Shown here: piece after piece, positions 19 to 54,231 of the stretch
Position numbering within the stretch: the first letter of the stretch is position 1
How the letters are laid out: each line of letters opens with the position of its first letter
Assembly (NCBI RefSeq): GCF_036588685.1
Contig: NC_086373.1
Coordinates: forward strand, 41,602,001-41,666,000
Direction of reading: 5' to 3'
Source: Mytilus trossulus
Lineage: Eukaryota
DNA length: 64,000 bases
Notes under the pieces: generated by a model
What the model was told of the DNA's origin: nothing
The model's input: only the letters and a program-made list of their open reading frames with translations
The model's database searches: none
Made by a program: the position numbers and the translations under genes

Positions 19-704
19 TATATGCACCAACAGACAAACATGCATTAGACAGACATGGAGTAGCAAAAGTTTTTCTGGATGAACACACAGTTGGAAGAAA
101 CATAAACAGGCGTCGTGGTGATGGATCTCTTTCTGTACTGGATGTTATTGATGCAAATAGACGAGCAGGATCAAGAGGAGTTGCAACATCTCATGGAATA
201 GGCAGTGAGTTTATTACACATGGGTCATCTTCCGGTAGAGGATTATCTGGAGTTTCAGTTGGTGGCAGGACCGCTGTATCTGGAAGCATTAGAGGCTCTT
301 CAATTGGTTTGTCCCGTGCTTTATCTGACGCTAATGATCAGTTCACGTCTGGTAGCCGAATTGGTTCATCTGGTCTGGCTAGAAATTTGGATCTGTCAAG
401 AAATTCTCATTTGGAAACTATTGGTAGTGGCCATGGAGTGTCTGGTCATTCGGGTGCAGATATTCCTGACGCAATCAGTTCTGGACGAGGTGGGCGTGTT
501 GTACTAGACACTGTTTCTGCCAGACGGAGTGGATCAGCACGTACTTCAGGTTCAGGAGTCGTTTCTCAGTCAGTGCTAGGAGGAAACACTGTTTGCAAAA
601 ACGACTGTTTTAGTGATGGAGATTGTCCAACAAACAGATACTGTGCCACTGTAAATTGTCACAGAATTTGCAGAAGAAGACTGTCAAATGGATACTCATC
701 ATGA
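19..704 (+). CDS. Gene A1, terminal coding exon of secreted Gly/Ser-rich protein with C-terminal 6-Cys WAP-like module (upstream exons outside window)
   Basis: Acceptor ttttacag at 11-18; open phase-1 frame (V)YAPTDKHALDRHGVAKVFLDEHTVG...CKNDCFSDGDCPTNRYCATVNCHRICRRRLSNGYSS*; 686 nt like the paralogous exons. Confidence 0.88.
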
Positions 705-756
705 AAAGCCTATCACCGAAATCCAGACTATGAACCTTTTTTTATATCTTTTTTAA

Positions 757-762
757 AATAAA
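757..762 (+). terminator. Polyadenylation signal AATAAA (same position after every paralog)
   Basis: AATAAA ~52 nt after the stop, followed by a T/GT-rich tract; conserved in the copies. Confidence 0.6.
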
Positions 763-1532
763 ATATTGCATTTAGCTTTTGTTATTGTATAGATTTTTTT
801 GTTATTTTATCAAAAATATTGACAAAGTCATTTGTCAAATAAAACGTATCAGAAAAATAAAAACAGCATACAGTCATAAATACAAATATGAATAAAGATA
901 ACAAAAGCATACAGCAGTTTTAAAAAATGTTCGGTAATTTGTTTAAATTACAGTTACTCGTAACACACAAAAAACATAACAAAAACAATCATAAAACATT
1001 TTCATCGCCAAAAGCAAAGACAATTCCTTGTCAATCTATACATTGATTGGAATTCTGAAATAACTACAAACATTCTTAGAAATTTTATGTTGGATACATG
1101 CTGATAGCTAGACAACACGGAAAACTAACGATTTTCTTTACAAAAACAGATAAATGGAGAATATTAGCATAGAAATATTTGATTATAAAAAGATGTATAC
1201 ATGGAACCTGAATTATAACATAAAAAGTATGAGGATATATTTGATTGCGAAAACTGTTAACCATGTTTACCTTGGGAAATAATATGTTTATTTGTAAATT
1301 GTTATATGTATACATTCATAAAGTTCGTGCTTGATGTAAAAAGACATATGAACTTATTTTTATCTAACTGTGGGATTGGATTTCAATCATTGTTGAAGGT
1401 AATTCTGGAGCATTTAGTTGTAAATTTCAACATTGTTACGTGTATGATGGATATTTGTCTTATCGGTAATCATTCCATATCTTATATCTTTATTAATTTG
1501 ACAGGTAAAAGTCTTCCAGCTGCACTCTTTAA

Positions 1533-4407: not shown

Positions 4408-4485
4408 TATATATATCCACAAAGCACTCAAAGCACGTTGGCCAATATGTAGATTTTATATTAAAAACACTGTTTAACTAAATAA

Positions 4486-4821: not shown

Positions 4822-4864
4822 CTCTTTATGTCAGAAAAAACAATCAAACCTCCAAACATACTAT

Positions 4865-5806: not shown

Positions 5807-6988
5807 TCATGATGAGTATCCATTAGACAGTCTTCTTCTGCAAATTCTGTGACAATTAACAATGGCACAGTATCTGTTTGTTGAACAATCTCCATCACTA
5901 AAACAGTCGTTTTGGCAATCAATTTTTCCTCCTACCACTGACTGAGAAATGAATCCCAAACCTGAAGTACGTGCTGATTCACTACGTCTTGTAGAAGCAG
6001 TGTCTAGAACCAAACGCCCACCTCGTCTAGAACTGATTGAGTCAAGAATATCTGTACCTGTATGACCAGACACTCCATGGCCACTACCAATAGTTTCCAA
6101 ATGAGAATTTCTGGACAGATCCTCATTTCTGGCCAGACCAGATGAACCAATTCGGCTACCAGAGGTAAAATGATCATCATCGCCAGATAAAGCACGGGAC
6201 AAACCAATTGAAGAACCTCTTATGATTCCAGATACAGGGTTTCTGCCCCCAACAGTAGCCCTAGACAATCCTCTACCGGAAGATGACCCGTGTGTAATAA
6301 ATTCACTGCCTATTCCATGAGATGTTTCATCTCCTCTAAACATCTCCTCTTGATCCTGCTCGTCTATTTGCATCAATAACATCCAGTAAAGAAAGAGATC
6401 CCTCACCACGACGCCTGTTTATGTTTCTACCAACTGTGTGTTCGACCAGTAAAACCTTCTCCACTCCATGTCTATCCAATGCATGTTTGTCTGTGGGTGC
6501 ATATACTGTAAAATGAATATTTGACGTGTTATAATTTTCACAAATCTAGTAATTAAAAAAAAAACTTTTGTTGATACGTAGATACTAGGATAACTGATAT
6601 TTTTACCAATTTGATTACCATATTCTTTAGATGAAATGACTAGAATGTTATCAACTGCATGGAACGTACGATTTCAGGACAGATGTAGGCTCATACTGTA
6701 TAGTAAGCTAAAAAAGAGTCCACATGAGAAATATGAATCAATTAAAAAAAAAACAGAAAACGTTTTGTGAAATTTTCTTTTATGTATATACAGATTGTAG
6801 TAATAAACACTCTTATGTACAAAAATTATATCTTTTTGACAATTGTATTATGGTAAGGTATTGGGAATTTTGTATCTTAACACCCAAAATATTTTATAAA
6901 AACATTCTATAAACTCTCATTAAATTTACTTACCGGCTACTGTTATTGTGGTCAATGCCATTAAAATGAAAATGGTTTGGAATCTCAT
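5807..6988 (-). pseudogene. Gene A2, frameshifted paralog (exons 6988-6934 and 6505-5807)
   Basis: Signal exon MRFQTIFILMALTTITVA with GT donor; terminal exon is 699 nt (686+13) because AGAGGAGATG-TTT-AGAGGAGATG gives an immediate in-frame TAG after ...RRAGSRGDV. Confidence 0.85.
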
Positions 6989-7162
6989 CCTCTTTATAGT
7001 TTCTGAAAAATAACAGAATTAATGTTTTACGTTACTGGAATTTTGATGTGCACGTTTCTTATGATTTTTAATTACCTAGAGAAAGAATGTTTCGTTGAGT
7101 AAAGCAGGCAATCATTTTGAAAAATCATACTTAATTAAATTGTTTTAGAATGCCCTTTTCTT

Positions 7163-11556: not shown

Positions 11557-12716
11557 ATGATGACATTCCAGACCATTTTCGTTTTGATGGCATTGGCCAC
11601 AATAACAGCAGCAGGTAAGAAAAATATGCAATGTGATTTAGTCGAAATTTATAAACTGTATCAAATAAAAGTGTTTTCATTATAAAATTAAAAAAAAAAA
11701 ACACAGAATGTTAAGATATTTCCAAAACCGAACAGTCTCTGCAATGGCTTACAACAACGTTCTTTTGCTGAAAGTGTGTGGTTGTTTAATTTGCGATAAT
11801 AATTGATATTATTGTATTGTTAAATAAAAAAAAATCACCAGGATTTTTTCGTGGTTTTGGTAAAGTCAACACTAATTACTTTAGAAAATTTGTTATTCGT
11901 TGATTATTTGAATTCGTGGTTCTCCTGTACCCATGAAATGTACGAAAACTGGTATCCAACGAATATTAATGAATCCACAGTAATCAACTCATGAAAATCA
12001 CATAAATTGTTAGATATTCAATATTTACAGTATATGCACCCTCGGATAAGCATGCAATAGACAGACATGGAGTGGAGAAAGTTTTACTGGTCGAAAACAC
12101 AGTTGGTAGAAACATAAACAGGCGTCGTGGTGACGGATCTCTTTCTGTACTGGATGTTATTGATGCAAATAGACGAGCAGGATCAAGAAATGTTGGAACA
12201 TCTCATGGAATAGGCAGTGAGTTTATTAAACACGGGTCATCTTCCGGTAGAGGATTGTCTGGAGCTTCAGTTGGTGGCAGGACCTCTGTATCTGGAAGCA
12301 TTAGAGGCTCTTCAATTGGTTTGTCCCGTGCTTTATCTGACGATGATGATCATTTCACGTCTGGTAGCCGAATAGGTTCATCTGGTCTGGCTAGAAATTT
12401 GGATCTGTCAAGAAACTCTCATTTGGAAACTATTGGTAGTGGCCATGGAGTGTCTGGTCATTCAGGTGCAGATATTCTTGACGCAATCAGTTCTGGACGA
12501 GGTGGGCGTGTTGTACTGGACACTGTTTCTTCCAGACGTAGTGTATCAGCACGTACTTCAGGTTCAGGATTCGTTTCTCAGTCATTGATAGGAGGAAAAA
12601 CTGATTGCAAAAACGACTGTTTTAGTGATGGAGATTGTCCAACAAACAGATACTGTGCCACTGTTAATTGTCACAGAATTTGCAGAAGAAGACTGTCTAA
12701 TGGATACTCATCATGA
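11557..12716 (+). CDS. Gene B1, secreted Gly/Ser-rich 6-Cys WAP-like protein, 247 aa (exons 11557-11614, 12031-12716)
   Basis: MMTFQTIFVLMALATITAA + phase-1 GT-AG intron + VYAPSDKHAIDRHG...; open to TGA. Confidence 0.9.
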
Positions 12717-13379: not shown

Positions 13380-13954
13380 CTATGTGATAAAGATTTCAAT
13401 CATTGTTGAAGGTAGTTCTGGTGCGTATAGTTGTAAGTTTGTATATACTGAAAAATTAATTAATGATTAATTTAGGAAAAAAAAGAAATTGTATTTTATT
13501 TTTATTGAACAATACAATGATTTCAAGTATTATCGCCAATAAAACAACTACACATTCTATGCAAAGGGAAGTTGTTGTAAGCAATTGTAAAGAAAATTAC
13601 TGAACTCCGAAAAATAAATAAAAACCGAAAGTCACTAATCAAATGGCAAACTAAAATGATAAGACACATCAAGCGAATGGAAGAGACTGTTCGGTTTTGC
13701 AAATATCAGCTGTTTAAAAGAACATTATCTAGTAGGACATTAAAATTTTATTTAAACACAGATCACACTTGTATTTGATACAGTTTATAAAATTTCGAGA
13801 AAATCACATTGAACATTTTTTTCTTACCAGCTGCTGTTATTGTGGTCAATGTCATCATAACGAAAATGGCTAAATACATTGAACATTTTTCTTACCGGCT
13901 TCTGTAATTGTGATCAATGCCATCAAAAGGAAAAATGGTCGGAAATCTCATCAT
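13380..13954 (-). pseudogene. Class C fragment (subtype C2), broken
   Basis: Signal exon 13954-13896 has a +1 frameshift; duplicated partial exon 13869-13828; acceptor at 13447 followed by only TATAT of exon 3; no exon 1 or TATA. Confidence 0.75.
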
Positions 13955-14835
13955 TTCTAAGTCTAAAATTTAGAGGAAAAATATCGATATTAATAAAATA
14001 GCAGTTCAAATAATTTAATACGAATTATGCAAATCGTGAAAATTAAGTTTCAATCTTTAAATGCAATATGACTTTACAATGAAATTAGGTTAACATTACA
14101 AATAAGAAAGTTACATACATGTAGATGTATATTCACGAATTAACACATGCAGAAAAAGGAACTTTCATAACTTTCATTGATTGTCAAGTATAAGTATAAT
14201 ATATATATTTACTTTTACAGTATTTAAACTTAAAAACAAACATTACTTCGAATGATTAATAACTTGAATATATCAAATATTTATTTCATTCCAAATTAAA
14301 TATTCAATTTGTTTTAAATCACTGTTAACATCAGTTGTGAAAATGAATTATACTTTGTAGCATTATTGTGTTACTGTATGTTAATTTAATTTACTGAGAT
14401 TAATACCAAAATATTGAAGTATGCATAACGCTTTAAACTTTAAAAATCTAATTTTCTTAATCTTTTATAACTTACATGTATATCCTATCTTTGTTACTAT
14501 GGCATTAATTATAGTTGTTATATCTTTCCTATTTATTTAAACCAAAAAACCAACACAGAAAACGAAGGATTTTCGTTACAAAAACAGATTAAGGGAAAGA
14601 TATTAGCATAGAAATCTTTGAATATAAAATGAGGTATACATGAAACCTGAATTATAACATAAAAAGTTTGCGAAAATTATTAACCATGTTATGACAATAA
14701 TACATCAGTGTTCTTATTTCCAAAAGAGGCACTCAGCATATACAATTAATGTGTGCATGAAGGGACAGCAACTTGCTAAAAACTGAATGTTTTTATTACC
14801 ACAATTAATTATGTTTAATTGGAAAACAAATATAT

Positions 14836-18626: not shown

Positions 18627-19152
18627 ATGATGAAATTTCCGACCATTTTCGTTTTGATTGCGTTGATAACAATAACAGTAGATGGTAAGAAAAGTGTTCA
18701 ATGTGTTTTTCTCGAAATTTATAAACTGTATCAAATAAAAGTGTGTTCAGTGTGTAAATAACATTTGAATGTCCTACTAGAGAATGTTCTTTAAAACAGC
18801 TGATTTTTGCAAAACCGAACAGTCTCTTCCATTCGCTTGATGTGTTTTATCATTTTAATTTGCCATTTGAATAGTGACTTTCGGTTTTGAATTTTCTTCG
18901 GAGTTCAGTACTTTTCTTTAGAATTGCTTACATCACCATCCCTTTGCGTAGAACGTATAGTTGTTTTATTGGAGATAACTCATGAAATCATTGTATTGTT
19001 CAATAAAAATAAATTACAATTTTTATTTTTTCTAAATTAATCATTAATTAATGTGTGAATATAACATAAATTGTCAGATCTTTAATTTAACAGTATATGC
19101 GTTAGATAGACAAACTTACATCTATATTCACCAGAATTACCTTCAACAATGA
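18627..19152 (+). pseudogene. Class C fragment (C1a) with intact 38-aa spliced micro-ORF (exons 18627-18684, 19094-19152)
   Basis: MMKFPTIFVLIALITITVD/VYALDRQTYIYIHQNYLQQ*; GT-AG intact; family promoter and exon 1 missing. Confidence 0.6.
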
Positions 19153-19834: not shown

Positions 19835-21009
19835 TCATGATGAGTATCCATTTGAAAGTCTTCTTCTGCAAATTCTGTGACAATTAACAGTGGCACAGTA
19901 TCTGTTTGTTGCACAATCTCCATCACTAAAACAGTCGTTTTTGCAATCAGTTTTTCCTCCTATCACTGACTGAGAAACGAATCCTGAACCTGAGGTACGT
20001 GTTAATCCACTACGTCTTGCAGAAACAGTGTCTAGTACAACACGCCCACCTCGTCTAGAACTGATTGCGTCAAGAATATCTGCACCTGAATGACCAGACA
20101 CTCCATGGCCACTACCAATAGTTTTCAAATGAGAATTTCTTGACAGATCCAAATTTCTAGCCAGACCAGATGAACTAATTCGGCTACCAGACGTGAAATG
20201 ATCATCATCGTCAGATAAAGCACGGGACAAACCAATTGAAGAGCCTCTAATGCTTCCAGATACAGAGGTCCTTCCACCAACTGAAGCTCCAGACAATCCT
20301 CTACCGGAAGATGACCCGTGTGTAATAAACTCACTACCTATTCCATGAGATGTTCCAACATTTCTTGATCCTGCTCGTCTATTTGCATCAATAACATCCA
20401 GTACAGAAAGAGATCCGTCACCACGACGCCTGTTTATGTTTCTACCAACTGTGTTTTCGACCAATAAAACTTTCTCCACTCCATGTCTGTCTAATGCATG
20501 CGTATCCGAGGGTGCATATACTGAAAAAAAATGAATATCTGACAATTTATGTGATTTTCATGAGTTGATTAATTGGAAAAAAAATACTGGTGATTTTTTT
20601 TTATTAAACAATACAATAATATCAATTATTATCGCCAATAAAACAACTACACAATTTTAGCAAAAGAACGTTGTTGTAAGGCATTGCAGAGACTGTTCGG
20701 TTTCGGAAATATTTTAACATTCTCTGTTATTTTTTTTTAAATGTTATCTATCACAAGGAAAAAGTAAAATCACAATAAAACTGAACTCAGAGGAAAATCA
20801 ATTAGGAAAGTCTATAATCACATGGCAAAATCAAATAACAAAACGCATCAAAAACGAATGGACAAGAACTGTCATATTCCTGACATAGGAAACACCTTTA
20901 TTTGATACAGTTTACATATTTCGACTAAAACACATTGAACATTTTTCTTACCGGCTGCTGTTATTGTGGCCAATGCAATCAAAACGAAAATGGTCTGGAA
21001 TGTCATCAT
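19835..21009 (-). CDS. Gene B2, secreted Gly/Ser-rich 6-Cys WAP-like protein, 247 aa (exons 21009-20952, 20520-19835)
   Basis: MMTFQTIFVLIALATITAA/VYAPSDTHALDRHG...; canonical splice sites; open frame. Confidence 0.9.
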
Positions 21010-25912: not shown

Positions 25913-27078
25913 ATGATGAGATTCCAAACCATTTTCATTTTAATGGCATTGACCACAATAACAGTAGCTGGTAAGTAAATTTACTGTGAGTTTATATAAT
26001 GTTTTTATAAAAAAAAACTTGGGTGTTAGGATAAAAAAATCCAAAATTACCATAATAAAATTTTCAAAAAGATATAATTTTTATGCATCAGAGGATTACT
26101 TACTAACATCTTTGTTTGGTTACATATAAGAAAATTGCACAAAAGGTTTTCTGTAGTTTAAAAAAAAAAATTGAATCATATTTGTCATGTGGAGTCTTTT
26201 ATAGCTTTCTATACAGTGAGCCTACATCTGAGCTGAAACCGTACGTTCCCAGCAGCTGATAACATTCTAGTCATTTCATCTTAAGTGTATGGTAATCAAA
26301 TTATAATATCTACGTATAAACAAAGTTTTTTTTTATTGTTTTGTATTACTAGATTTGAGAAAATTATAACACGTCAAATATTTATTTTACAGTGTATGCA
26401 CCCACAGACAAACATGCATTAGACAGACATGGAGTAGAAAAAGTTTTGCTGGTTGAACACACAGTTGGAAGAAACATAAACAGGCGTCGTGGTGAGGGAT
26501 CTCTTTCTGTCCTGGATGTCATTGATGCAAATAGACGAGCAGGATCAAGAAATGTTGGAACATCTCATGGAATAGGCAGTGAATTTATTACACACGGGTC
26601 ATCTTCCGGTGGAGGATTGTCTGGGGCTTCAGTTGGTGGCAGGATCTCTGTATCTGGAAGCATAAGAGGTTCTTCAATTGGTTTGTCCCGTGCTTTGAAT
26701 AGCGATGATGATCATTTCACCTCTGGTAGCCGAATTGGTTCATCTGGTCTGGCTAGAAATTTGGATCAATCCAGAAGTTCTCATTTGGAAACTATTGGCA
26801 GAAGCCGTGGAGTGTCTGGTCATACAGCTACCGATCTTCTTGATTCAATCAGCTCTGGACGAGGTGGGCGTGTTGTTCTAGACACTATTTCTGCCAGACG
26901 TAGTGGGTCACCACGTACTTCAGGTTCAGGATTCATTTCTCAGTCAGTGGTAGGAGGTAAAACTGATTGCAAAAACGACTGTTTTAGTGATGGAGATTGT
27001 CCAAAAAACAGATACTGTGCCACTGTTAATTGTCACAGAATTTGCAGAAGAAGACTATCAAATGGATACTCATCATGA
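25913..27078 (+). CDS. Gene A3, secreted Gly/Ser-rich 6-Cys WAP-like protein, 247 aa (exons 25913-25970, 26393-27078)
   Basis: MMRFQTIFILMALTTITVA/VYAPTDKHALDRHG...; canonical splice sites; open frame. Confidence 0.9.
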
Positions 27079-29182: not shown

Positions 29183-29777
29183 ATGATGAGATTTCCGACC
29201 ATATTCGTTTTGATGGCATTGATCACAATTACAGAAGCCGGTAAGAAAAATGTTCAATGTGTTTAGCCATTTTTGTTATGATGACATTGACCACAATAAC
29301 AGCAGCTGGTAAGAAAAAATGTTCAATGTGTTTTTCTCGAAATTTATAAACTGTATCAAATAAAAGTTTGTTCTGTGTTTAAATAAAATTTTAATGTCCT
29401 ACTAGATAATGTTCTTTAAAACAGCTGATATTTGCAAAACCGAACAGTCTCTTCCATTCGCTTGATGTGTTTTATCATTTTATTTTGCCATTTGATTAGT
29501 GACTTTCGGTTTTGAATTTTCTTCGGAGTTCAGTACTTTTCTTTACAATTGCTTACAACAACTTCCCTTTGCATAGAATGTGTAGTTGTTTTATTGGCGA
29601 TAATACTTGAAAACATTGTATTGTTCAATAACAATAAAATACAATTTCTTTTTTTTCTAAATGAATCATTAATTAATTCATGAATATAACATAAATTGTC
29701 AGATCTTTAATTTTATAGCATATGTATTAGATAAACTTACAAATATATGCACCAGAACTACCTTCAACAATGATTGA
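29183..29777 (+). pseudogene. Class C fragment (subtype C2)
   Basis: Signal exon 29183-29240 MMRFPTIFVLMALITITEA; duplicated partial exon 29267-29308; exon-3 remnant from 29719 with a 4-nt deletion relative to C1. Confidence 0.7.
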
Positions 29778-30458: not shown

Positions 30459-31611
30459 TCATGATGAGTATCCATTTGAAAGTCTTCTTCTGCAAATTCT
30501 GTGACAATTAACAGTGGCACAGTATCTGTTTGTTGGACAATCTCCATCACTAAAACAGTCGTTTTTGCAATCAGTTTTTCCTCCTATCACTGACTGAGAA
30601 ACGAATCCTGAACCTGAGGTACGTGCTGATCCACTACGTCTTGCAGAAACAGTGTCTAGTACAACACGCCCACCTCGTCTAGAACTGATTGCGTCAAGAA
30701 TATCTGCACCTGGATGACCAGACACTCCATGGCCACTACCAATAGTTTTCAAATGAGAATTTCTTGACAGATCCAAATTTCTAGCCAGACCAGATGAACC
30801 AATTCGGCTACCAGACGTGAAATGATCATCATCGTCAGATAAAGCACGGGACAAACCAATTGAAGAGCCTCTTATGCTTCCAGATACAGAGGTCCTTCCA
30901 CCAACTGAAGCTCCAGACAATCCTCTACCGGAAGATGACCCGTGTGTAATAAACTCACTGCCTATTCCATGAGATGTTCCAACATTTCTTGATCCTGCTC
31001 GTCTATTTGCATCAATAACATCCAGTACAGAAAGAGATCCGTCACCACGACGCCTGTTTATGTTTCTACCAACTGTGTTTTCGACCAGTAAAACTTTCTC
31101 CACTCCATGTCTGTCCAATGCATGCTTTTCCGAGGGTGCATATACTGAAAAAATTGAATATCTGACAATTTATGTGATTTTCATGCGTTGATTAATTGGA
31201 AAAAAATACTGGTGATTTTTGTTTTATTTAACAATACAATAATATCAATTATTATCGCCAAAAAAAGAGCTACACACTTTTAGCAAAAGACGTTGTTGTA
31301 AGGCATTGCAGAGACTGTTCGGTTTCGTTATTATTTTTTTTAAATGTTATCTACACAAAGAAAAAGTAAAATCACAAAAATACTGAACTCAGTGGAAAAT
31401 CAACTAGGAAAGTCTATAATCACATGGCAAAATCAAATAACAAAACGCATCAAAAACGAATGGACAAGAACTGTCATATTCCTGACATAGGAAACACCTT
31501 TATTTGATACAGTTTACATATTTCGACTAAAACACATTGAAAATTTTTCTTACCGGCTGCTGTTATTGTGGCCAATGCAATCAAAACGAAAATGGTCTGG
31601 AATGTCATCAT
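30459..31611 (-). CDS. Gene B3, secreted Gly/Ser-rich 6-Cys WAP-like protein, 247 aa (exons 31611-31554, 31144-30459)
   Basis: Signal exon plus 686-nt terminal exon; canonical splice sites; open frame. Confidence 0.9.
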
Positions 31612-36542: not shown

Positions 36543-37721
36543 ATGATGAGATTCCAAACCATTTTCATTTTAATGGCATTGACCACAATTACAGTAGCTG
36601 GTAAGTAAATTTACTGTGGGTTTATAGTATGTTTTTATAAAAAAAAATTGGGTGTTGAGATACACAATTCCCAATACCTTACCATAATACAATTTTTAAA
36701 AAGATATAATTTCTGTACATAAGAGGGTTGATTACTAACATCTACATATGTTTGTATACATAAAAGAAAAATTCACAAAAAGTTTTCTGTTTTTTTAAAT
36801 TGATTCATATTTGTCATGTGGAGTCTTTTATAGCTTTCTATACAGTATGAGCCTACATCTGAGCTGAAATCGTACGTTCCCTGCAGTTGAAATCATTCTG
36901 GTCATTTCATTTAAAGTTTATTGTAATCAAATTGGTAGAAATACCAGATTTTCTAATATCTACGTATCAACAAAAGTTGTTTTTTTATTGTTTTGTATTG
37001 CTAAATTGGTGAAAATTATAACACGTCAAATACTAATTTTACAGTATATGCACCAACAGACAAACATGCATTAGACAGACATGGAGTAGCAAAATATTTG
37101 CTGGATGAACACACAGTTGGAAGAAACATAAACAGGCGTCGTGGTGACGGATCTCTTTCTGTACTGGATGTTATTGATGCAAATAGACGAGCAGGATCAA
37201 GAAATGTTGGAACATCTCATGGAATAGGAAGCGAGTTTATTACACACGGGTCATCTTCCGGTAGAGGATTGTCTGGAGCTTCAGTTGGTGGCAGGACCTC
37301 TGTATCTGGAAGCATTAGAGGCTCTTCAATTGGTTTGTCCCGTGCTTTATCTGACGATGAAGATCAGTTCAAGTCTGGTAGCCGAATTGGTTCATCTGGT
37401 CTGGCTAGAAATTTGGATCTGTCAAGAAATTCTCATTTGGAAACTATTGGCAGTGGCCATGGAGTGTCTGGTCATTCAGGTGCAGATATTCTTGACGCCA
37501 TCAGTTCTGGACGTGTTGTACTAGACACTGTTTCTGCCAGACGTAGTGGATCAGCACGTACTTCAGGTTCAGGACTCGTTTCTCAGTCAGTGCTAGGAGG
37601 AAACACTGTTTGCAAAAACGACTGTTTTAGTGATGGAGATTGTCCAACAAACAGATACTGTGCCACTGTTAATTGTCACAGAATTTGCAGAAGAAGACTG
37701 TCAAATGGATACTCATCATGA
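36543..37721 (+). CDS. Gene A4, secreted Gly/Ser-rich 6-Cys WAP-like protein, 244 aa (exons 36543-36600, 37045-37721)
   Basis: Open frame; terminal exon 677 nt because of an in-frame 9-nt deletion (SSGRVV vs SSGRGGRVV). Confidence 0.9.
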
Positions 37722-41330: not shown

Positions 41331-41858
41331 ATGATGAGATTTCCGACCATTTTCATTTTGATTGCATTGATAACAATAACAGTAGCCGGTAAGAAAAGTG
41401 TTCAATGTGTTTTTCTCGAAATTTATAAACTTTATCAAATAAAAGTGTGTTCAGTGTGTAAATAACATATGAATGTCCTACTAGAGAATGTTCTTTAAAA
41501 CAGCTGATATTTGCAAAACCGAACAGTCTCTTCCATTCGCTTGATGTGTTTTATCATTTTAATTTGCCATTTGAATAGTGACTTTCGGTTTTGAATTTTC
41601 TTCGGAGTTCAGTACTTTTCTTGAGAATTGCTTACAACAACATCCCTTTGCATAGAATGTGTAGTTGATTTAATCGGAGATAACACATGAAATCATTGTA
41701 TTGTTCAATAGAAATAAAATACAATATTTATTTATTTCTAAATTAATCATTAATTAATAAGTGAATATAACATAAATTGTCAGATCTTTAATTTAACAGT
41801 ATATGCGTTAGATAGACAAACTTACAACTATATGCACCAGAATTACCTTCAACAATGA
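41331..41858 (+). pseudogene. Class C fragment (C1b) with intact 38-aa spliced micro-ORF (exons 41331-41388, 41800-41858)
   Basis: MMRFPTIFILIALITITVA/VYALDRQTYNYMHQNYLQQ*; no family promoter. Confidence 0.6.
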
Positions 41859-42541: not shown

Positions 42542-44261
42542 TCATGATGAGTATCCATTTGAAAGTCTTCTTCTGCAAATTCTGTGACAATTAACAGTGG
42601 CACAGTATCTGTTTGTTGGACAATCTCCATCACTAAAACAGTCGTTTTTGCAATCAGTTTTTCCTCCTATCACTGACTGAGAAACGAATCCTGAAGCTGA
42701 GGTACGTGTTGATCCACTACGTCTTGCAGAAACAGTGTCTAGTACAACACGCCCACCTCGTCTAGAACTGATTGCGTCAAGAATATCTGCACCTGAATGA
42801 CCAGACACTCCATGGCCACTACCAATAGTTTTCAAATGAGAATTTCTTGACAGATCCAAATTTCTAGCCAGACCAGATGAACTAATTCGGCTACCAGACG
42901 TGAAATGATCATCATCGTCAGATAAAGCACGGGACAAACCAATTGAAGAGCCTCTAATGCTTCCAGATACAGAGGTCCTTCCACCAACTGAAGCTCCAGA
43001 CAATCCTCTACCGGAAGATGACCCGTGTGTAATAAACTCACTACCTATTCCATGAGATGTTCCAACATTTCTTGATCCTGCTCGTCTATTTGCATCAATA
43101 ACATCCAGTACAGAAAGAGATCCGTCACCACGACGCCTGTTTATGTTTCTACCAACTGTGTTTTCGACCAGTAAAACTTTCTCCACTCCATGTCTGTCTA
43201 ATGCATGCTTATCCGAGGGTGCATATACTGAAAAAATTGAATATCTGACAATTTATGTGATTTTCATGCGTTGATTAATTGGAAAAAAAATACTGAAACC
43301 TCAAATCAAAAAAAATAATGCATATGTTTTTTATAACTCAATGGATAGTTTTCATTATAAAACTTATGTACATATACTTTTTTCTGAAGAAAATTCTTAA
43401 ATTTATTCATATTTAGAAGAAGTTTACTTAATTTTAATTGCTTGCTTCCAGCAACCAATTCCCCCGACATATTTTCCGTATGCAAAGTGACCTCAGTGTG
43501 ACCCATCTCGTAAAAATCCGGTGATCACAATACGCATGGATGTCCTTAAAATAAACTATTATCTGAATTCACATGTTAAACACGTGCTCTCTTTCCATGC
43601 TTTTTTTGTTTATTTTTTGTCTATTGTTGACAAACAGGTGACCATCGTTAAACTTCGGCTTCGAAATACGAACTTTAATTACCTGCCATATTTACACAAC
43701 AACACTGACCGATTGAAAAAAAAATTTGACGATTATACGAAATTTACACGAAAAAAATGATAAATTCGTGCACAGAAGACTATGTTTATGATGTGTGTAT
43801 GCATTGGTTCAAGAAATGGAAGAACATATTTTTTCACCGGTCACTCGTTTCTTTTGACTTTAACAATACAATAATAACAATTATTATCGCCAATAAAACA
43901 ACTACACAATTTTAGCAAAAGAACGTTGTTGTAAGGCATTGCAGAGACCGTTCGGTTTCGGAGATATCTGACATTCTTTGTTAATTTTTTTTAAATGTTA
44001 TCTACACAAGGAAAAAGTAAAATCACAAAAAAATGAACTCAGAGGAAAATCAATTAGGAAAGTCTATAATCACATGGAAAAATCAAATAACAAAACGCAT
44101 CAAAAACGAATGGACAAGAACTGTCATATTCCTGATATAGGAAACACCTTTATTTGATACAGTTTACATATTTCGACTAAAACACATTGAACATTTTTCT
44201 TACCGGCTGCTGTTATTGTGGCCAATGCAATCAAAACGAAAATGGTCTGGAATGTCATCAT
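42542..44261 (-). CDS. Gene B4, secreted Gly/Ser-rich 6-Cys WAP-like protein, 247 aa (exons 44261-44204, 43227-42542)
   Basis: Canonical splice sites; open frame; intron 2 enlarged by an insertion. Confidence 0.9.
43296..43859. mobile_element. One-ended DNA-transposon fragment in B4 intron 2
   Basis: Absent from B2/B3; right end ...tttcttttgact abuts TTAA (a TTAA is present at the B3 empty site); left end and adjacent flank deleted. Confidence 0.65.
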
Positions 44262-47763: not shown

Positions 47764-47869
47764 AAATAGTTTATTTATATGTAGATTATATATACTCAAC
47801 ACTTATGAGTATTAATGTTTTGTAACTTAGAACCCTACACAGTGATGTGAATATCTTTTCAATTTATAG

Positions 47870-48311
47870 ATTGGTGATAACATTCATAATGAACAATTGG
47901 TGATAACATTCATAATGTACAATTGGTGGTAACATTCATAATGAACAATTGGTGGTAACATTCATAATGAATAATTGGTGATAACATTCATAATGAACAA
48001 TTGGTGATAACATTCATAATAAACAATTGGTGGTAACATTCATAATGAACAATTGGTGGTAACATTCATAATGAATAATTGGTGATAACATTCATAATGA
48101 ACAATTGGTGGTAACATTCACAATGAACAGTTGGTGATAACATTCATAATGAACAATTGGTGATAACATTCATAATGAACAATTGGTGATAACATTCATA
48201 ATGAACAATTGGTGATAACATTCATAATGAACAATTGGTGATAACATTCATAATGAACAATTGGTGATAACATTTATAATGAACAATTGGTGATAACATT
48301 CATAATGAACA
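47870..48311 (+). repeat. 26-bp promoter VNTR, 17 copies
   Basis: 442 bp = 17 x 26; several units have GGTAA in place of GATAA. Confidence 0.95.
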
Positions 48312-48654
48312 ATCATAACAATGACGGAGTATGAGGAGGAGATATGCAAGATACATTAAAACTATTTTTTCAAAATTGTTCAATAGTTTGTTTTCAAAGA
48401 AGGATGGTTCTCGTCATTTTTGTAAGCATAAGCTCAAGCAGTGTTAAATAAGATATATCTTAGTAATTACTGTGTTAAAAAAAAACATTCGAACAAAATA
48501 TCAAGCAGTGGTTTTCAAGTAAATTTCATTTAAAAGATTTAAACGTCTAAACCATGCGGAAATAAAAGGCTTTCGGATAGGTTTTGTTAAAAATGTACAA
48601 GTCTCTGATTACAACGAAATTAATAACTTGCAATTTGAACCATATTGTCGATCA

Positions 48655-49358: not shown

Positions 49359-50534
49359 ATGATGAGATTCCAAACCATTTTCATTTTAATGGCATTGACC
49401 TCAATAACAGTAGCTGGTAAGTAAATTTACTGTGGGTTTATAGTATGTTTTTATAAAAAAAAAATGGGTGTTGAGATACAAAATACCTTACCATAATACA
49501 ATTTTCAAAAAGATATAATTTCTGTACATAAGAGGGTTAATTACTAACATCTACATATGTTTGTATACATAAAAGAAAAAATCACAAAAAGTTTTCTGTT
49601 TTTTTTTTAATTGATTCATATTTGTCATGTGGAGTCTTTTAAAGCTTACTATACAGTATGAGCCTACATCTGTCCTGAAATCGTACGTTCCCTGCAGTTG
49701 ATTACATTCTAGTCATTTCATTTTAAGTTTAAGGTAATCAAATTGGTAAAAATACCACATTTTCTAATATCTACGTATCAACAAAAGTTTTTTTTTTTGT
49801 ATTACTAGATTTGTGAAAATTATAACACGTCAAATATTCATTTTACAGTATATGCACCAACAGACAAACATGCATTAGACAGACATGGAGTAGCAAAAGT
49901 TTTGCTGGATGAACACACAGTTGGAAGAAACATAAACAGGCGTCGTGGTGACGGATCTCTTTCTGTACTGGATGTCATTGATGCAAATAGACGAGCAGGA
50001 TCAAGAAATGTTGGAACATCTCATGGAATAGGAAGCGAGTTTATTACACACGGGTCATCTACCGGTAGAGGATTGTCTGGAGCTTCAGTTGGTGGCAGGA
50101 CCTCTGTATCTGGAAGCATTAGAGGCTCTTCAATTGGTTTGTCCCGTGCTTTATCTGATGATGATGATCAGTTCACGTCTGGTAGCCGAATTGGTTCATC
50201 TGGTCTGGCTAGAAATTTGGATCTGTCAAGAAATTTTCATTTGGAAACTATTGGTAGTGGCCATGGATTGTCTGGTCATTCAGGTGCAGATATTCTTGAC
50301 GCACTCAGTTCTGGACGAGGTGGGCGTGTTGTACTAGACACTGTTTCTGCCAGACGGAGTGGATCAGCACGTACTTCAGGTTCAGGAGTCGTTTCTCAGT
50401 CAGTGCTAGGAGGAAACACTGTTTGCAAAAACGACTGTTTAAGTGATGGAGATTGTCCAACAAACAGATACTGTGCCACTGTTAATTGTCACAGAATTTG
50501 CAGAAGAAGACTGTCAAATGGATACTCATCATGA
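49359..50534 (+). CDS. Gene A5, secreted Gly/Ser-rich 6-Cys WAP-like protein, 247 aa (exons 49359-49416, 49849-50534)
   Basis: MMRFQTIFILMALTSITVA/VYAPTDKHALDRHG...; open frame. Confidence 0.9.
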
Positions 50535-51140
50535 AAAGCCTATAACCGAAATCCAGACTATGAACCTTTTTTATATCTTTTTTAAAATAAAATATTGCAT
50601 TTAGTTTTTGTTATTGTATGGATTTTTTTTGTTATTTTATCAAAAATATTGACAAAGTCATTTGTCAAATAAAACGTTTCAGAAAAATTTAAACAGCATA
50701 CAGTCATAAATACAAATATGAATAAAGATAACAAAAGCATACAGCAATTTAAAAAAGTGTTCGGTAATTTGTTTAAATTACAGTTACTCGTAACACACAA
50801 AAAACCTAACAAAACAATCATAAAACACTTTCTTCGCCAAAGCAAAGACAATTCCTTGTCAATCTCTACATTAATTGGAATTCTGAAATAACTAAAAACA
50901 TTCTTAGAAATTGTATGTTGGATACATGCTGATAGCAAGATAACACGAAAAACCAACGATTTTACTTACAAAAACAGATTAATGGAGAATATTAGCATAG
51001 CAATATTTGATTATAAAAAGAGGTATACATGGAATCTGAATTATAACATAAAAAGTATGAGGACATATTTGTTTGCGAAAATTGTTAACAATGTTTATTT
51101 TTGAAAATAATATGTTTATTTGTAAATTGTTATATGTATA

Positions 51141-52491
51141 TGTTGTGTACAAGTTATCATTTTGTACAAAAATATTGTACAAATTATACTTTGTATTTTG
51201 ACTTTGTACAAATTACAATTTGTACAAAACGTGCTTGTACAAATTACAATTTGTACAAAATTTGACCAAAATTCACTTATAACTTGTACAACAGTTTTAA
51301 AAACGAATTTTGGTGAAAAATGCAATGATTCACACGATAGAATTGTAATTAACTGACCACACACTAAACATTATTAACATACACTGTTTGTGGACAACTC
51401 CAAAAGGCAGGTTGATCTTCGAAACTTTTGAGAGAAAAAAAAGTAAACAAATAGGATTTTTTCAAATTTTTAATACACTAACGTCTTTTTCTTTAAAAAG
51501 ATATCATTTAATAGTACTGCTTGATTAGTTCTTTATTTTGAGGGTTTTTTTTTATTCAGAAACTTTGCAAACGATTATATTTGTAAAATTTCATATTTTG
51601 TATCGCGTACAGCGTTTTGATGATCGTGAAAAGGATCTCAAAAGATTTGTTCTCACTTATTCGTTATTTCTATAAGTCCATGAAAACAATCAAATATTTC
51701 TTTAAGCAAGTATTAATTTATATTTGTAATTGCTACATCAAAAGATTGAATTTACATGACTTATTCCGCTTCACTTTTGTTTGTGAAAAGATTGATGATT
51801 CGATGCCATTGGGTCTGATAATTTTAAAATAATACACCAACTAGTTTTCTTATAAAATAAATGTCCGTCCGTCTGTCTGGTTAGCATAAATTTTATTTTG
51901 TTTTTAAAGTTTAGACTGTCGCAACTGTTTTCCGTTAAGTGTTATGCACAGTAATAAAACAAAGATCCTGGTTGAAAAAAAACCATTGATAAAATACGGC
52001 AAAAAACAACTGACATATTCCTGACTTTTGCATAGTCATATTCCTAACCAAATGGGGTCTTTAATCTTCTAGGATATCTATTTTGTTTAAAATTTTGACT
52101 GGAGCAGTTAATTGCACATATTAATTCACAGCAACGGTTTCTGATCTTCAACGCTCGCTATAAGAAACAGTTAAAATGCCTGTAAAACAGGTAGTCATCG
52201 AATTGAGAGTCAAAAGATGGTTTGCAATACCTGATTCCATAAATCACTAGATCACCTGCTGAAACGAATGATAAAGAACTACTTTTGAATTTTGTAACTT
52301 AGGTGTACTGTCTGGCCATTAAGTAGCAATTCAATAATGTGTATCAATGCTTTTTTCGCCAAAATCCATATGAAAAATTATTGTACAAGTTATAAGTGAT
52401 TTTTTGTCCTATTTTGTACAAATTGTAGTTTGTACAAGCACTTTTTGTACAAATTACAATTCGTACAAAGTCAAAATACAAATTATAATTA
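51141..52491. mobile_element. Foldback-type element with ~190-bp imperfect inverted arms rich in TGTACA
   Basis: Arms ~51182-51370 / ~52300-52490; flanked by direct repeat taaattgttatatgtata; absent from other class A flanks. Confidence 0.75.
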
Positions 52492-53545
52492 TAAATTGTT
52501 ATATGTATACATTCATAAAGTTCGTCCTTAATGTTAAAAGACATATGAACTTATTTTTTATCTAATTGTGGGATATAGATTTCAATCATTGTTGAAGGTA
52601 ATTCTGGAGCATTTAGTTAATAATTTTCGCATACTTTTTATGTTATAATTCAGGTTTCATGTATACCTCTTTTTATAATCAAAGATTTCTATGCTAATAT
52701 CTTTCCCTTAATCTGTTTTTGTAACGAAAATCGTTAGTTTTCTGTTGTTTTTTTTTGTTTAAATAAATAGGAAAGATATAACAAATATAATTAATGCCAT
52801 AGTAACAAAGATAGGATATAAATGAAGTTATAACCAGTTTTATTTGCTAATTGAAAATTAAGCGGAATAAAATAATTTAAGACAGCAGAGAAGATAATTC
52901 TGTTTAATTGGTTATTACTAACCGACTTAAATAAAAGAGTGAGCTATTATTATTGTAAATGTATAATGTCTCTAGTCTGGTCAAAGGGTCAGAGTGTCCT
53001 ACTTAATTAAACGATAAATTGTTGAAATTAGATAACTTGTTTTCACGTGCAGAGAAATTTCTTTTATGTCCAATGCATGACCGGATATCATCTTTCTTAT
53101 TGGTCAATGGCATTGCGGGTCAGCACGAGTTCACGTGTAAGTGCATTGTGGTCACTTCCTTTTATCATCAGTATTTGATGTGTTAACTTGTGATTCTTAT
53201 CAAACAATTTATTCAAAATTATATGTGGATTAATTTTGGACTGGAGTGATTTCATTTTAGCTATTTCAGGTAAAATCGAACTATACTTTTATATTCTATG
53301 CTTACATTTTGAACATATTTGTCATGTGGAGTCTTTTAAAGCTTACTATACAGTATGAGCCTACATCTGTCCTGAAATCGTACGTTCCCTGCAGTTGATT
53401 ACATTCTAGTCATTTCATTTTAAGTTTAAGGTAATCAAATTGGTAAAAATACCACATTTTCTAATATCTACGTATCAACAAAAGTTTTTTTTTTTGTATT
53501 ACTAGATTTGTGAAAATTATAACACGTCAAATATTCATTTTACAG

Positions 53546-54231
53546 TATATGCACCAACAGACAAACATGCATTAGACAGACATGGAGTAGCAAAAGTTTT
53601 GCTGGATGAACACACAGTTGGAAGAAACATAAACAGGCGTCGTGGTGACGGATCTCTTTCTGTACTGGATGTCATTGATGCAAATAGACGAGCAGGATCA
53701 AGAAATGTTGGAACATCTCATGGAATAGGAAGCGAGTTTATTACACACGGGTCATCTACCGGTAGAGGATTGTCTGGAGCTTCAGTTGGTGGCAGGACCT
53801 CTGTATCTGGAAGCATTAGAGGCTCTTCAATTGGTTTGTCCCGTGCTTTATCTGATGATGATGATCAGTTCACGTCTGGTAGCCGAATTGGTTCATCTGG
53901 TCTGGCTAGAAATTTGGATCTGTCAAGAAATTTTCATTTGGAAACTATTGGTAGTGGCCATGGATTGTCTGGTCATTCAGGTGCAGATATTCTTGACGCC
54001 CTCAGTTCTGGACGAGGTGGGCGTGTTGTACTAGACACTGTTTCTGCCAGACGGAGTGGATCAGCACGTACTTCAGGTTCAGGAGTCGTTTCTCAGTCAG
54101 TGCTAGGAGGAAACACTGTTTGCAAAAACGACTGTTTAAGTGATGGAGATTGTCCAACAAACAGATACTGTGCCACTGTTAATTGTCACAGAATTTGCAG
54201 AAGAAGACTGTCAAATGGATACTCATCATGA
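53546..54231 (+). pseudogene. A6, orphan but open duplicate of the A5 terminal exon
   Basis: Intact acceptor, ORF and AATAAA; the duplication starts inside intron 2, so exons 1-2 were not copied; protein identical to A5. Confidence 0.75.

What the first reader, a model, noticed from the sequence alone, without database searches (positions are those of the whole stretch)
19..54231. Ten-copy cluster of an unrecognised secreted Gly/Ser-rich protein family hidden by a signal-peptide mini-exon
Seen: the ORF track shows only headless ORFs. Splicing a 58-nt upstream exon (MMRFQTIFILMALTTITVA or MMTFQTIFVLxALATITAA) in phase 1 gives a 244-247 aa precursor with a signal peptide, ~190 aa of G/S/R-rich low-complexity sequence and a Cys module. 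Seven complete intact genes lie in the window. Known: a Gly/Ser-rich tract followed by a C-terminal WAP domain is the layout of the abalone lustrin A C-terminus, and Gly-rich plus WAP is the layout of type II crustins. Inference: a dosage-amplified extracellular matrix (shell, byssus, periostracum or larval) or defence protein. I do not recognise it as a named gene.
Basis: partly seen in the sequence, partly recalled or inferred. Interest (0 to 1): 0.85.

Follow-up and report, generated by a model that had tools for sequence, protein, structure and literature searches.

The report
Amplified mussel reduced-WAP secreted protein genes
This stretch of a Mytilus (mussel) chromosome holds ten copies of a gene for a secreted, floppy serine/glycine/arginine-rich protein ending in a small three-disulfide knot derived from the WAP domain; the genes are real and already predicted in public annotation, but nobody has shown what they do.

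Summary
The window has ten copies of a ~686-nt coding exon and eight copies of a 58-nt signal-peptide exon. They are joined in phase 1 by canonical GT/AG introns of 409-976 nt.

- **Copies:** seven genes are complete and intact (c3-c9). c1 has its first exon 478 nt before the window. c2 is a frameshifted pseudogene. c10 is a headless copy inside a 99.9%-identical 3.7-kb tandem duplication.
- **Already annotated:** five window genes are identical, in both exons, to Mytilus trossulus RefSeq proteins named "uncharacterized protein" (244-247 aa). UniProt calls relatives "WAP domain-containing protein". The splice model is therefore neither hidden nor new.
- **Protein:** about 80% is predicted disordered (S 16-18%, G 14-15%, R 11%, pI ~10). 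Only the last ~35 residues fold.
- **Cys module:** it matches only WAP structures and aligns to canonical WAPs of longer relatives minus Cys1 and Cys6.
- **Array:** it is built from head-to-head pairs of two types. Their promoters and introns cannot be aligned, yet they share a nearly identical exon 2 plus 3' flank.
- **Extent:** the cluster holds at least 17 short-type copies over 111 kb.
- **Function:** untested. My best guess is a crustin/waprin-like protective protein, with a lustrin-like matrix protein as a close rival.

The parts
19..704 (+). c1 (type A), exon 2 only. Its exon 1 lies 478 nt before the window start.
   Evidence: Open frame of 228 codons. The exon-2 translation equals the C-terminal 228 aa of RefSeq XP_063424223.1 (P0011). 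Exon 1 was found in L001.
5807..6991 (-). c2 (type A) pseudogene: exon 1 6991-6934, exon 2 6505-5807.
   Evidence: The first ATG is changed to AGG. A 13-nt insertion at 6350-6338 shifts the frame and gives a TAG after 56 codons of exon 2.
11557..12716 (+). c3 (type B): exon 1 11557-11614, intron 416 nt, exon 2 12031-12716.
   Evidence: Both exons are identical to XP_063424245.1 (P0003).
13792..13986 (-). Orphan type-C exon-1 relic. It is frameshifted (59 nt, 13954-13896) and has a local 68-nt tandem duplication.
18627..18684 (+). Orphan type-C signal-peptide exon (MMKFPTIFVLIALITITVD), 58 nt, GTAAGA donor, no exon 2 on its strand nearby.
19835..21009 (-). c4 (type B): exon 1 21009-20952, intron 431 nt, exon 2 20520-19835.
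   Evidence: The frame is intact.
25913..27078 (+). c5 (type A, the most divergent copy): exon 1 25913-25970, intron 422 nt, exon 2 26393-27078.
   Evidence: This copy was the query.
29183..29240 (+). Orphan type-C signal-peptide exon, with a 68-nt local duplication at 29199-29333.
30459..31611 (-). c6 (type B): exon 1 31611-31554, intron 409 nt, exon 2 31144-30459.
   Evidence: Both exons are identical to XP_063424269.1 (P0090).
36543..37721 (+). c7 (type A): exon 1 36543-36600, intron 444 nt, exon 2 37045-37721 (9-nt in-frame deletion, 244 aa).
   Evidence: Both exons are identical to XP_063438136.1 (P0091).
41331..41388 (+). Orphan type-C signal-peptide exon.
42542..44261 (-). c8 (type B): exon 1 44261-44204, intron 976 nt, exon 2 43227-42542.
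   Evidence: Both exons are identical to XP_063424323.1 (P0002).
49359..50534 (+). c9 (type A): exon 1 49359-49416, intron 432 nt, exon 2 49849-50534.
   Evidence: Both exons are identical to XP_063424281.1 (P0092).
53546..54231 (+). c10: headless exon 2, with a protein identical to c9's.
   Evidence: It lies in the second copy of a 3,699-bp tandem duplication (49617-53315 / 53314-57012, 99.92% identical). The duplication begins inside c9's intron, so no exon 1 was copied.
62552..62609 (+). Orphan type-C signal-peptide exon, at the start of the next repeat unit.

Best explanation
What it is (shown). The window holds a tandemly and invertedly amplified array of two-coding-exon genes in a Mytilus genome, most likely M. 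trossulus. Each gene encodes a 244-247-aa precursor made of three parts:
- a 19-residue signal peptide on its own 58-nt exon;
- about 170 residues of cationic Ser/Gly/Arg-rich chain, predicted disordered but carrying conserved short motifs (three copies of hLDxhxxxRRxGS, and a DDDD patch);
- a C-terminal 6-Cys knot, C-x3-C-x5-C-x5-C-x4-C-x3-C, which is a WAP domain that has lost Cys1 and Cys6, the pair that forms one disulfide in canonical WAPs.

How the array is built (shown). The unit of amplification is a head-to-head pair: type B on one strand and type A on the other, 4.6-5.1 kb apart, plus an orphan exon 1. Types A and B have unalignable promoters and introns but share a nearly identical exon 2 and 3' flank. 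That block has therefore been exchanged or gene-converted between the types.

How it most likely works (inferred). The protein is exported. The disulfide knot is a stable cationic head of the waprin/crustin kind, which binds or disrupts microbial or other surfaces. It is unlikely to act as a standard-mechanism protease inhibitor, because the loop that carries the inhibitory site in elafin and SLPI is cut down to 3 residues and Cys1 is gone. The disordered tail would act as a hydrated spacer or tether. High copy number supplies dosage.

My odds:
- Real, expressed, secreted gene family: 0.95.
- Module is WAP-derived: 0.85.
- Protective or defence role: about 0.4.
- Structural matrix role: about 0.35.
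For: Gene structure:
- Exons, splice sites and phase are as described.
- Five window genes are identical in both exons to RefSeq proteins.

Conservation and selection:
- 67 homologues were found. Every one that carries a source name is from one of five Mytilus species; two (P0029, P0052, from ENA) are unnamed.
- dN/dS is 0.27-0.59 in 33 of the 36 pairs of the nine open copies. The three pairs outside that range (c4-c8, c7-c10, c9-c10) rest on very few substitutions.

Signal peptide:
- Basic or polar start, a 14-residue hydrophobic core (mean Kyte-Doolittle 1.8-2.0), and T/A-x-A before the junction.

Composition and fold:
- S 16-18%, G 14-15%, R 11%, pI 9.6-10.1, and 6 Cys at fixed spacing.
- In the AlphaFold2 model only residues ~190-222 are confident (pLDDT 82-90). 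The rest is below 50.
- Foldseek's seven best hits are omwaprin 3ngg (two chains), SLPI 4doq and 2z7f, the engineered peptide 6atu (two chains) and elafin 2rel, with nawaprin 1udk at rank 9. Ranks 1-7 show rmsd 1.2-2.3 A over 29-33 columns and probability 0.47-1.00. E-values are weak (0.1-1.7) because the domain is small.
- A Foldseek-independent scan of 48,161 chains gave only three with Z >= 2: SLPI, omwaprin and 6atu.

WAP relationship:
- Pfam WAP matches 42 of 43 family members at E <= 0.1. It passes the curated cut-off on the homologous module of P0050 (27.3 bits).
- Alignment with the canonical 8-Cys WAPs at the N-termini of relatives P0069 and P0084 puts the six Cys on C2, C3, C4, C5, C7 and C8.

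Array architecture:
- Self-BLAST.
- Part-by-part identities between A and B: upstream 300 nt 43-53%, intron 49-56%, exon 1 84-88%, exon 2 91-95%, 3' flank 81-94%.
- At least 17 short-type copies lie on one chromosome stretch.

Literature:
- Omwaprin is an antibacterial, membrane-disrupting WAP (PMC6266942).
- Type II crustins are defined as signal peptide + Gly-rich domain + Cys-rich domain + WAP (PMC9680087).
Against:
- The window copies fall below Pfam's WAP cut-off.
- All structural E-values and Z-scores are weak in absolute terms.
- Single-sequence and profile searches of PDB sequences found no WAP.
- A 23-kDa, 80% disordered protein is not typical of an antimicrobial peptide.
- Longer relatives string up to eight of these 6-Cys modules behind one canonical WAP, on Ser/Gly-rich linkers (P0069). 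That looks more like a modular matrix protein.
- The disulfide pairing was not examined; I assume it from the canonical WAP pattern.
Confidence: 0.55

Rival explanations
1. Structural extracellular-matrix protein of the shell, periostracum or byssus, lustrin-like. The Ser/Gly-rich chain would be an elastic or hydrated spacer in a biomaterial. The acidic DDDD patch and the basic remainder would bind mineral or polyanions. The WAP-derived knot would cap or protect the matrix. Gene amplification would serve bulk production.
For: - Relatives in M. californianus and M. coruscus carry 1 to 8 of the 6-Cys modules, separated by Ser/Gly-rich linkers. One is named "hornerin-like".
- Low-complexity regions combined with WAP are a recurrent shell-matrix signature (PMC5854119, PMC6641155).
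- WAP-bearing novel genes rise during M. edulis shell repair (PMC8194122).
- "Whey acidic protein-like" and "Hornerin/filaggrin" transcripts are among the top 25 mantle-specific transcripts of M. galloprovincialis (PMC4581086). Their identity with this family is not verified.
- WAP-like proteins are foot- and mantle-enriched in another mytilid (PMC5549309).
Against: - No paper or accession search linked this family to any proteome.
- The disordered region is conserved position by position, with fixed motifs. That is unlike typical fast-evolving repetitive low-complexity domains.
- Tyr is very low (3 residues) and Pro is low (1-3 residues), so it is not a DOPA adhesive or a collagen-like protein.
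Confidence: 0.35
2. Pro-protein. The nearly invariant dibasic sites (ANRR|AG, S-x-RR|SGS, and an RRR near the N-terminus) would be convertase cleavage sites. Cleavage would release a ~57-residue three-disulfide mini-WAP peptide plus linear peptides. This reading is compatible with the defence reading.
For: - R48 and R169-R170 are conserved in at least 90% of 43 family members, inside a region predicted to be disordered.
- Dibasic sites sit at the same positions in all nine open copies.
- The hLDxhxxxRR motif is repeated three times.
Against: - There is no processing evidence of any kind.
- Arginine makes up 11% of the protein, so RR pairs are expected fairly often.
- The same motifs could be binding or assembly motifs.
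Confidence: 0.15
3. The copy number is inflated by assembly error, or the copies are mostly unexpressed decaying duplicates.
For: - c9 and c10 sit in a 99.92%-identical 3.7-kb tandem duplication that could be a collapsed or duplicated haplotype.
- c2 is a pseudogene.
- The orphan exon-1 copies show the array has been turning over.
Against: - The other copies differ by 1-15% and have distinct flanks and intron lengths, so they are separate loci.
- Nine of ten frames are open, with dN/dS mostly 0.3-0.6.
- Multi-copy clusters are annotated in four other Mytilus genomes.
Confidence: 0.05

Closest known systems
WAP four-disulfide-core domain (Pfam PF00095), especially the single-domain antibacterial waprins (omwaprin, nawaprin)
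   Same: - Same fold by structure search.
- Same Cys spacing from C2 to C8, including the short C2-x3-C3 step. That step is also seen in the canonical WAPs of this family's own longer members.
- The module is cationic.
   Different: - Six Cys, not eight: Cys1 and Cys6, which form one disulfide in canonical WAPs, are both absent, and the segment is one residue shorter at the CC position.
- Window copies are below Pfam's cut-off (16.7 vs 20.8 bits).
- The module sits behind ~190 residues of disordered chain instead of standing alone.
Type II crustins of decapod crustaceans
   Same: The order of parts is the same: signal peptide, Gly-containing low-complexity region, C-terminal WAP-type knot. Both are cationic and both occur as multigene families (PMC9680087).
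   Different: - No 4-Cys "cysteine-rich domain" and no 12-Cys crustin signature.
- Gly is only 14-15%, without VGGGLG-type repeats; Ser and Arg are co-dominant.
- The host is a mollusc, not a crustacean.
- No sequence homology outside the WAP core.
Lustrin A of abalone nacre (C-terminal part)
   Same: A Gly/Ser-rich region, then basic residues, then a WAP-like C-terminal module. Longer family members also alternate Cys modules with low-complexity linkers. The comparison rests on the published description of lustrin A (cited in PMC5854119) and on my own knowledge; it is not a sequence test.
   Different: - The window proteins are about 6 times shorter and have no Pro-rich domains or lustrin-type Cys-rich repeats.
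- Homology was not tested, because I had no lustrin sequence in hand.
- No evidence that these proteins are in shell.
RefSeq/UniProt models of the same family (e.g. M. trossulus LOC134708015, LOC134707974, LOC134707990, LOC134719084, LOC134707999; M. galloprovincialis A0A8B6GJT6)
   Same: Identical proteins and an identical exon junction.
   Different: They are only computed models named "uncharacterized" or "WAP domain-containing". I found no publication, function or family name.

Membership tests
WAP domain (PF00095) | Eight conserved Cys forming four disulfides (C1-C6, C2-C7, C3-C5, C4-C8) | tested here: not met
   Only six Cys, with spacing 3-5-5-4-3 in all nine open copies. Alignment to canonical WAPs shows that C1 and C6 are missing.
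WAP domain (PF00095) | Score at or above Pfam's gathering cut-off (20.8 bits) | tested here: inconclusive
   Window copies score 13.2-16.7 bits, matching profile positions 10-39 of 41. The homologous module of relatives reaches 20.0 bits (P0070) and 27.3 bits (P0050). 42 of 43 members match at E <= 0.1.
WAP domain (PF00095) | WAP fold (small beta-hairpin plus a short helical turn on a disulfide core) | tested here: met
   The model has strands at 207-212 and 215-220 with pLDDT 82-90. Top Foldseek hits are omwaprin, SLPI and elafin, with nawaprin at rank 9. Only three chains of 48,161 reach Z >= 2: SLPI, omwaprin and the engineered peptide 6atu. Absolute scores are low because the domain is about 35 residues.
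WAP-type protease inhibitors (elafin/SLPI type) | Exposed inhibitory loop between C1 and C3 that carries the scissile bond | tested here: not met
   C1 is absent and C2-C3 are separated by only 3 residues. The position of the loop in elafin and SLPI comes from my own knowledge of those structures. Inhibitory activity itself was not tested.
Type II crustin | 12-Cys crustin signature (4-Cys domain plus 8-Cys WAP) | tested here: not met
   The whole mature protein has 6 Cys. The definition is from PMC9680087.
Type II crustin | N-terminal Gly-rich domain of repeated tetra- or pentapeptides | tested here: not met
   Gly is 14-15%, with Ser 16-18% and Arg 11%. Tandem Repeats Finder reported no tandem array inside any of the coding exons.
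Secreted protein with a cleavable signal peptide | N-terminal n-, h- and c-regions with small residues at positions -3 and -1 | tested here: met
   The sequences are MMR/MMT, then a 14-residue hydrophobic core (Kyte-Doolittle 1.8-2.0), then T-V-A or T-A-A at the exon end. This was judged by rule; SignalP was not available.
Lustrin A | Sequence homology and alternating Cys-rich and Pro-rich domains | not tested
Pro is only 1-3 residues per protein.

The most novel reading that the evidence does not exclude
The genes encode pro-proteins that are cut at the conserved dibasic sites. Cleavage would release a ~57-residue three-disulfide "mini-WAP" peptide, a new class of mollusc host-defence peptide, together with conserved linear LD-motif peptides. 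The two unrelated promoter and intron types (A and B), kept on one homogenised coding body, would let the same effector be deployed in two tissues or conditions. The orphan type-C first exons could be a third, alternative entry point.
Probability: 0.12. Interest if true: 0.6.

Novelty: new variant of a known kind. Interest (0 to 1): 0.4.

Why it matters
Mussels are models for wet adhesion, biomineralisation and antibody-free immunity. Their genomes are known for large, variable arrays of lineage-specific secreted proteins.

- **An uncharacterised cluster.** This is one of the larger such clusters: at least 17 near-identical genes, plus a dozen or so longer relatives, over about 280 kb. I found no paper on it.
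- **Domain evolution.** It documents a WAP domain that lost one whole disulfide and then multiplied, both as a module within proteins and as a gene.
- **Concerted evolution.** Two paralogue types with unalignable promoters and introns share an exchanged coding and 3' block. This is a clean case for studying concerted evolution and regulatory diversification.
- **Practical value.** If the C-terminal knot is antimicrobial or mineral-binding, it is small enough to synthesise.

This is still a member of a well-known domain superfamily with unknown function. It is not a new kind of system.

Tried and rejected
**RNA evidence.**

**Joined spliced model.** Exon 2 was searched by reference. Exon 1 (19 aa) is too short for the search tools. 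The joined product was assessed only through natural RefSeq proteins that a search returned.

**Sequence searches that gave nothing useful.**
- PDB sequence searches with the whole exon 2, the last 45 aa and the family profile found no WAP. The best hit was a 24-residue Dumpy DPY module at E 0.6-0.9.
- The ESM Atlas gave no usable hit.
- A second homologue search, with the divergent relative P0084, added only unnamed transcriptome proteins and one M. californianus "prestalk protein-like". Presence of the family outside Mytilus stays unproven.

**Literature.** Eight searches found no paper on the family. They covered accession numbers, WAP with byssus, shell, foot, proteome and antimicrobial terms, and omwaprin. 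One apparent hit, PMC9873513, was the author name "Waples".

**Other checks.**
- Rfam found no RNA family in the window.
- RGD motif: it is present in most copies (RRRGDG) but not conserved in the family (RGE, RGG), so I rejected it as functional.
- Quick ML tree: the type-A group is supported (0.99), but the joint A+B M. trossulus clade is not (0.26). I therefore make no claim that the whole expansion is species-specific.

Full report

Yes. A six-frame ORF list shows ten closely related open frames ending in ...NRYCATVNCHRICRRRLSNGYSS*. A motif scan finds ten such ends: + 704, 12716, 27078, 37721, 50534, 54231 and - 5807, 19835, 30459, 42542. It also finds eight copies of a short upstream exon.

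Every exon 1 is 58 nt long, begins ATGATG (AGGATG in c2) and ends ...G|GTAAG[TA]. Every exon 2 follows a T-rich tract and cag, and begins T[AG]TATGCACC. The last G of exon 1 completes a Val codon. Introns are 409-444 nt, and 976 nt in c8.

The window contains no N.

**2. Gene table**

| Copy | Strand | Type | Exon 1 | Exon 2 | Note |
|---|---|---|---|---|---|
| c1 | + | A | outside window, G000:C1:41601522-41601579 | 19-704 | complete across the window edge |
| c2 | - | A | 6991-6934 | 6505-5807 | pseudogene |
| c3 | + | B | 11557-11614 | 12031-12716 | intact |
| c4 | - | B | 21009-20952 | 20520-19835 | intact |
| c5 | + | A | 25913-25970 | 26393-27078 | intact, most divergent |
| c6 | - | B | 31611-31554 | 31144-30459 | intact |
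| c7 | + | A | 36543-36600 | 37045-37721 | 9-nt in-frame deletion, 244 aa |
| c8 | - | B | 44261-44204 | 43227-42542 | intact, intron 976 nt |
| c9 | + | A | 49359-49416 | 49849-50534 | intact |
| c10 | + | A | none | 53546-54231 | headless |

- c2's first ATG is changed to AGG. A 13-nt insertion at 6350-6338 shifts the frame to a TAG.
- c10 lies in the second copy of a 3,699-bp tandem duplication (49617-53315 / 53314-57012, 99.92% identical). The duplication starts inside c9's intron.

Two things were missed:
- Five orphan "type C" copies of the signal-peptide exon. Four are intact (+ 18627-18684, 29183-29240, 41331-41388, 62552-62609) and one is frameshifted (- 13954-13896). Each lies 1.1-1.2 kb downstream of a B gene in convergent orientation, with no exon 2 on its strand for about 7.7 kb.
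- An acceptor-like pyrimidine tract plus cag lies 6-11 nt before every ATG. This suggests a further non-coding 5' exon.

**3. Whose genome, and is the model new?**

The exon-2 product finds 67 proteins. Every one that carries a source name is from Mytilus (M. trossulus, M. edulis, M. galloprovincialis, M. coruscus, M. californianus); two, from ENA, are unnamed. Many are 244-247 aa.

Exon by exon, c3, c6, c7, c8 and c9 are identical to M. trossulus RefSeq proteins XP_063424245.1, XP_063424269.1, XP_063438136.1, XP_063424323.1 and XP_063424281.1. c1's exon 2 equals XP_063424223.1.

So the gene structure is correct, but it is already in public annotation as "uncharacterized protein". UniProt calls relatives "WAP domain-containing protein". 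A signal peptide on its own small exon followed by a phase-1 intron is an ordinary layout for secreted proteins.

The joined product was judged from these natural database proteins.

**4. The protein**

The mature chains are 225-228 aa and about 23.5 kDa, with pI 9.6-10.1. Composition is Ser 16-18%, Gly 14-15%, Arg 11%, Asp 7%, with 3-4 Tyr, no Trp, no N-glycosylation sequon, and six Cys at spacing 3-5-5-4-3.

Exon 1 has the features of a cleavable signal peptide. This was judged by rule, without SignalP.

An AlphaFold2 model built on a 43-sequence family alignment is confident only for residues ~190-222 (pLDDT 82-90, a beta-hairpin at 207-212 / 215-220). It is below 50 elsewhere.

The "disordered" part is nevertheless conserved position by position. 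It has nearly invariant motifs around SLSVLDVIDANRR-GS, SGSRIGSSGL, HLETIG, GH-G-DILD-IS and VLDTVS-RRSGS. These amount to three copies of an hLDxhxxxRR-type motif, plus a central DDDD patch.

**5. The Cys module**

- **Pfam.** WAP (PF00095) matches at 13.2-16.7 bits, profile positions 10-39 of 41, below the 20.8-bit cut-off. The same module matches in 42 of 43 family members and passes the cut-off in P0050 at 27.3 bits.
- **Foldseek.** The top hits are omwaprin (3ngg), half-SLPI (4doq, 2z7f), the engineered peptide 6atu and elafin (2rel), with nawaprin (1udk) at rank 9. Ranks 1-7 show rmsd 1.2-2.3 A over 29-33 columns and probability 0.47-1.00.
- **Foldseek-independent scan.** Of 48,161 representative chains, only three reach Z >= 2: SLPI, omwaprin and 6atu.
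- **Relatives with canonical WAPs.** Longer relatives (P0069 from M. californianus; P0084, unnamed transcriptome) start with a canonical 8-Cys WAP and then carry two to eight of the 6-Cys modules.
- **Alignment.** In an alignment of all these modules, the six Cys fall on WAP C2, C3, C4, C5, C7 and C8. C1 and C6 are absent, and the segment is one residue shorter at the CC position.

C1 and C6 pair with each other in canonical WAPs (established knowledge). So the module is best described as a WAP that lost one whole disulfide. Earlier first-stage notes of this scan proposed the same reading; it is now tested. PDB sequence searches alone do not show the relationship.

**6. Architecture and evolution of the array**

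Self-BLAST and the exon maps show a repeating unit of about 10.6-12.1 kb: an orphan C exon (+), a B gene (-), 4.9-5.1 kb of spacer, then an A gene (+). It is present three times in direct order (c4/c5, c6/c7, c8/c9). It occurs once inverted (c2/c3 plus relic) across a centre near 14.5-18 kb, which holds a 51-nt minisatellite.

Identity between A and B genes, part by part:

| Part | Identity |
|---|---|
| Upstream 300 nt | 43-53% (unalignable) |
| Intron | 49-56% (unalignable) |
| Exon 1 | 84-88% |
| Exon 2 | 91-95% |
| 400 nt after the stop | 81-94% |

The BLAST blocks between the types start 20-40 nt before the acceptor. For the closest A copies (c7, c9), synonymous divergence from B genes (0.11-0.12) matches the 3'-flank divergence. 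So the exon-2-plus-3' block has been exchanged or converted between two otherwise old paralogue types.

dN/dS among the nine open copies is 0.27-0.59 in 33 of 36 pairs. The three pairs outside that range (c4-c8, c7-c10, c9-c10) rest on very few substitutions. This indicates moderate purifying selection.

In the whole genome, the same chromosome carries at least 17 short-type exon-2 copies between 41,584,101 and 41,695,093. Longer paralogues lie on both sides, from 41,563k to 41,847k.

A quick tree puts the window's A copies in a supported M. trossulus-only group (0.99), and c5 next to an M. edulis protein (0.86). Deeper nodes are unsupported.

**7. Function**

Nothing here measures function. 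The RNA route was shut.

The features suggest an exported protein whose only folded part is a small, cationic, disulfide-locked WAP-type head behind a long flexible cationic tail.

The nearest structural match, omwaprin, is an antibacterial, membrane-disrupting WAP (PMC6266942). The order of parts parallels type II crustins (PMC9680087).

The loop that carries the inhibitory site in elafin and SLPI is reduced to three residues, and Cys1 is missing. Canonical protease inhibition is therefore unlikely. This is an inference from known WAP-protease complexes.

I commit, at about 0.4, to a protective or defence role of the waprin/crustin kind.

The close rival, at about 0.35, is a structural matrix protein:
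- Multi-module "hornerin-like" relatives exist.
- Low-complexity-plus-WAP proteins are usual in mollusc shell matrices (PMC5854119, PMC6641155).
- "WAP-like" and "hornerin/filaggrin" transcripts are among the top mantle-specific transcripts of M. galloprovincialis (PMC4581086; identity with this family unverified).

A third reading, processing at the conserved dibasic sites into a ~57-residue mini-WAP peptide, is compatible with the first and is untested.

**8. Novelty and verdict**

The models are public and the domain belongs to a known superfamily.

What is new is the characterisation:
- a reduced, three-disulfide WAP multiplied as a module and as a gene;
- a pair-wise amplification unit with two unrelated 5' ends on one homogenised coding body;
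- orphan first exons.

I found no paper naming the family. I rate it a new variant of a known kind, with interest 0.4.

Noticed in passing
window 18627-18684, 29183-29240, 41331-41388, 62552-62609 (+) and 13954-13896 (-): Five orphan "type C" copies of the signal-peptide exon (MM[RK]FPTIFVLIALITITV[AD]). Four are intact with a GTAAGA donor. Each lies 1.1-1.2 kb 3' of a B-type gene in convergent orientation, with no exon 2 on its strand for about 7.7 kb. They may be relics of a lost third paralogue or alternative first exons of the A genes.
   Followed up: partly
window 24277-24860, 34952-35473, 47870-48313: A 26-nt minisatellite (11-20 copies) sits 1.05-1.6 kb upstream of the ATG of each type-A gene (c5, c7, c9). 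It is not present upstream of type-B genes. It may lie in the promoter or in a 5' intron.
   Followed up: no
window 14835-15756: A 51-nt minisatellite of 18 copies, 98% matching. It produces three long spurious ORFs on the minus strand, and it sits at the centre between the inverted unit (c2/c3) and the direct units.
   Followed up: no
window 49617-57012: A 3,699-bp tandem duplication at 99.92% identity. It is either a very young duplication or an assembly or haplotype artefact, and it creates the headless copy c10.
   Followed up: partly
window 59451-60089 and 57927-58295: Tandem arrays of a 66/197-nt unit (about 10 copies of the 66-nt unit) and of a 182-nt unit (2 copies), in the gene-free, strongly AT-skewed right end of the window. 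No Rfam family matched anywhere in the window.
   Followed up: no
G000:C1:41563499-41847202 (outside the window): The family cluster extends about 280 kb. Longer paralogues carry one or two extra internal 6-Cys modules. M. californianus has a 731-aa relative (P0069) with a canonical N-terminal WAP followed by eight 6-Cys modules.
   Followed up: partly
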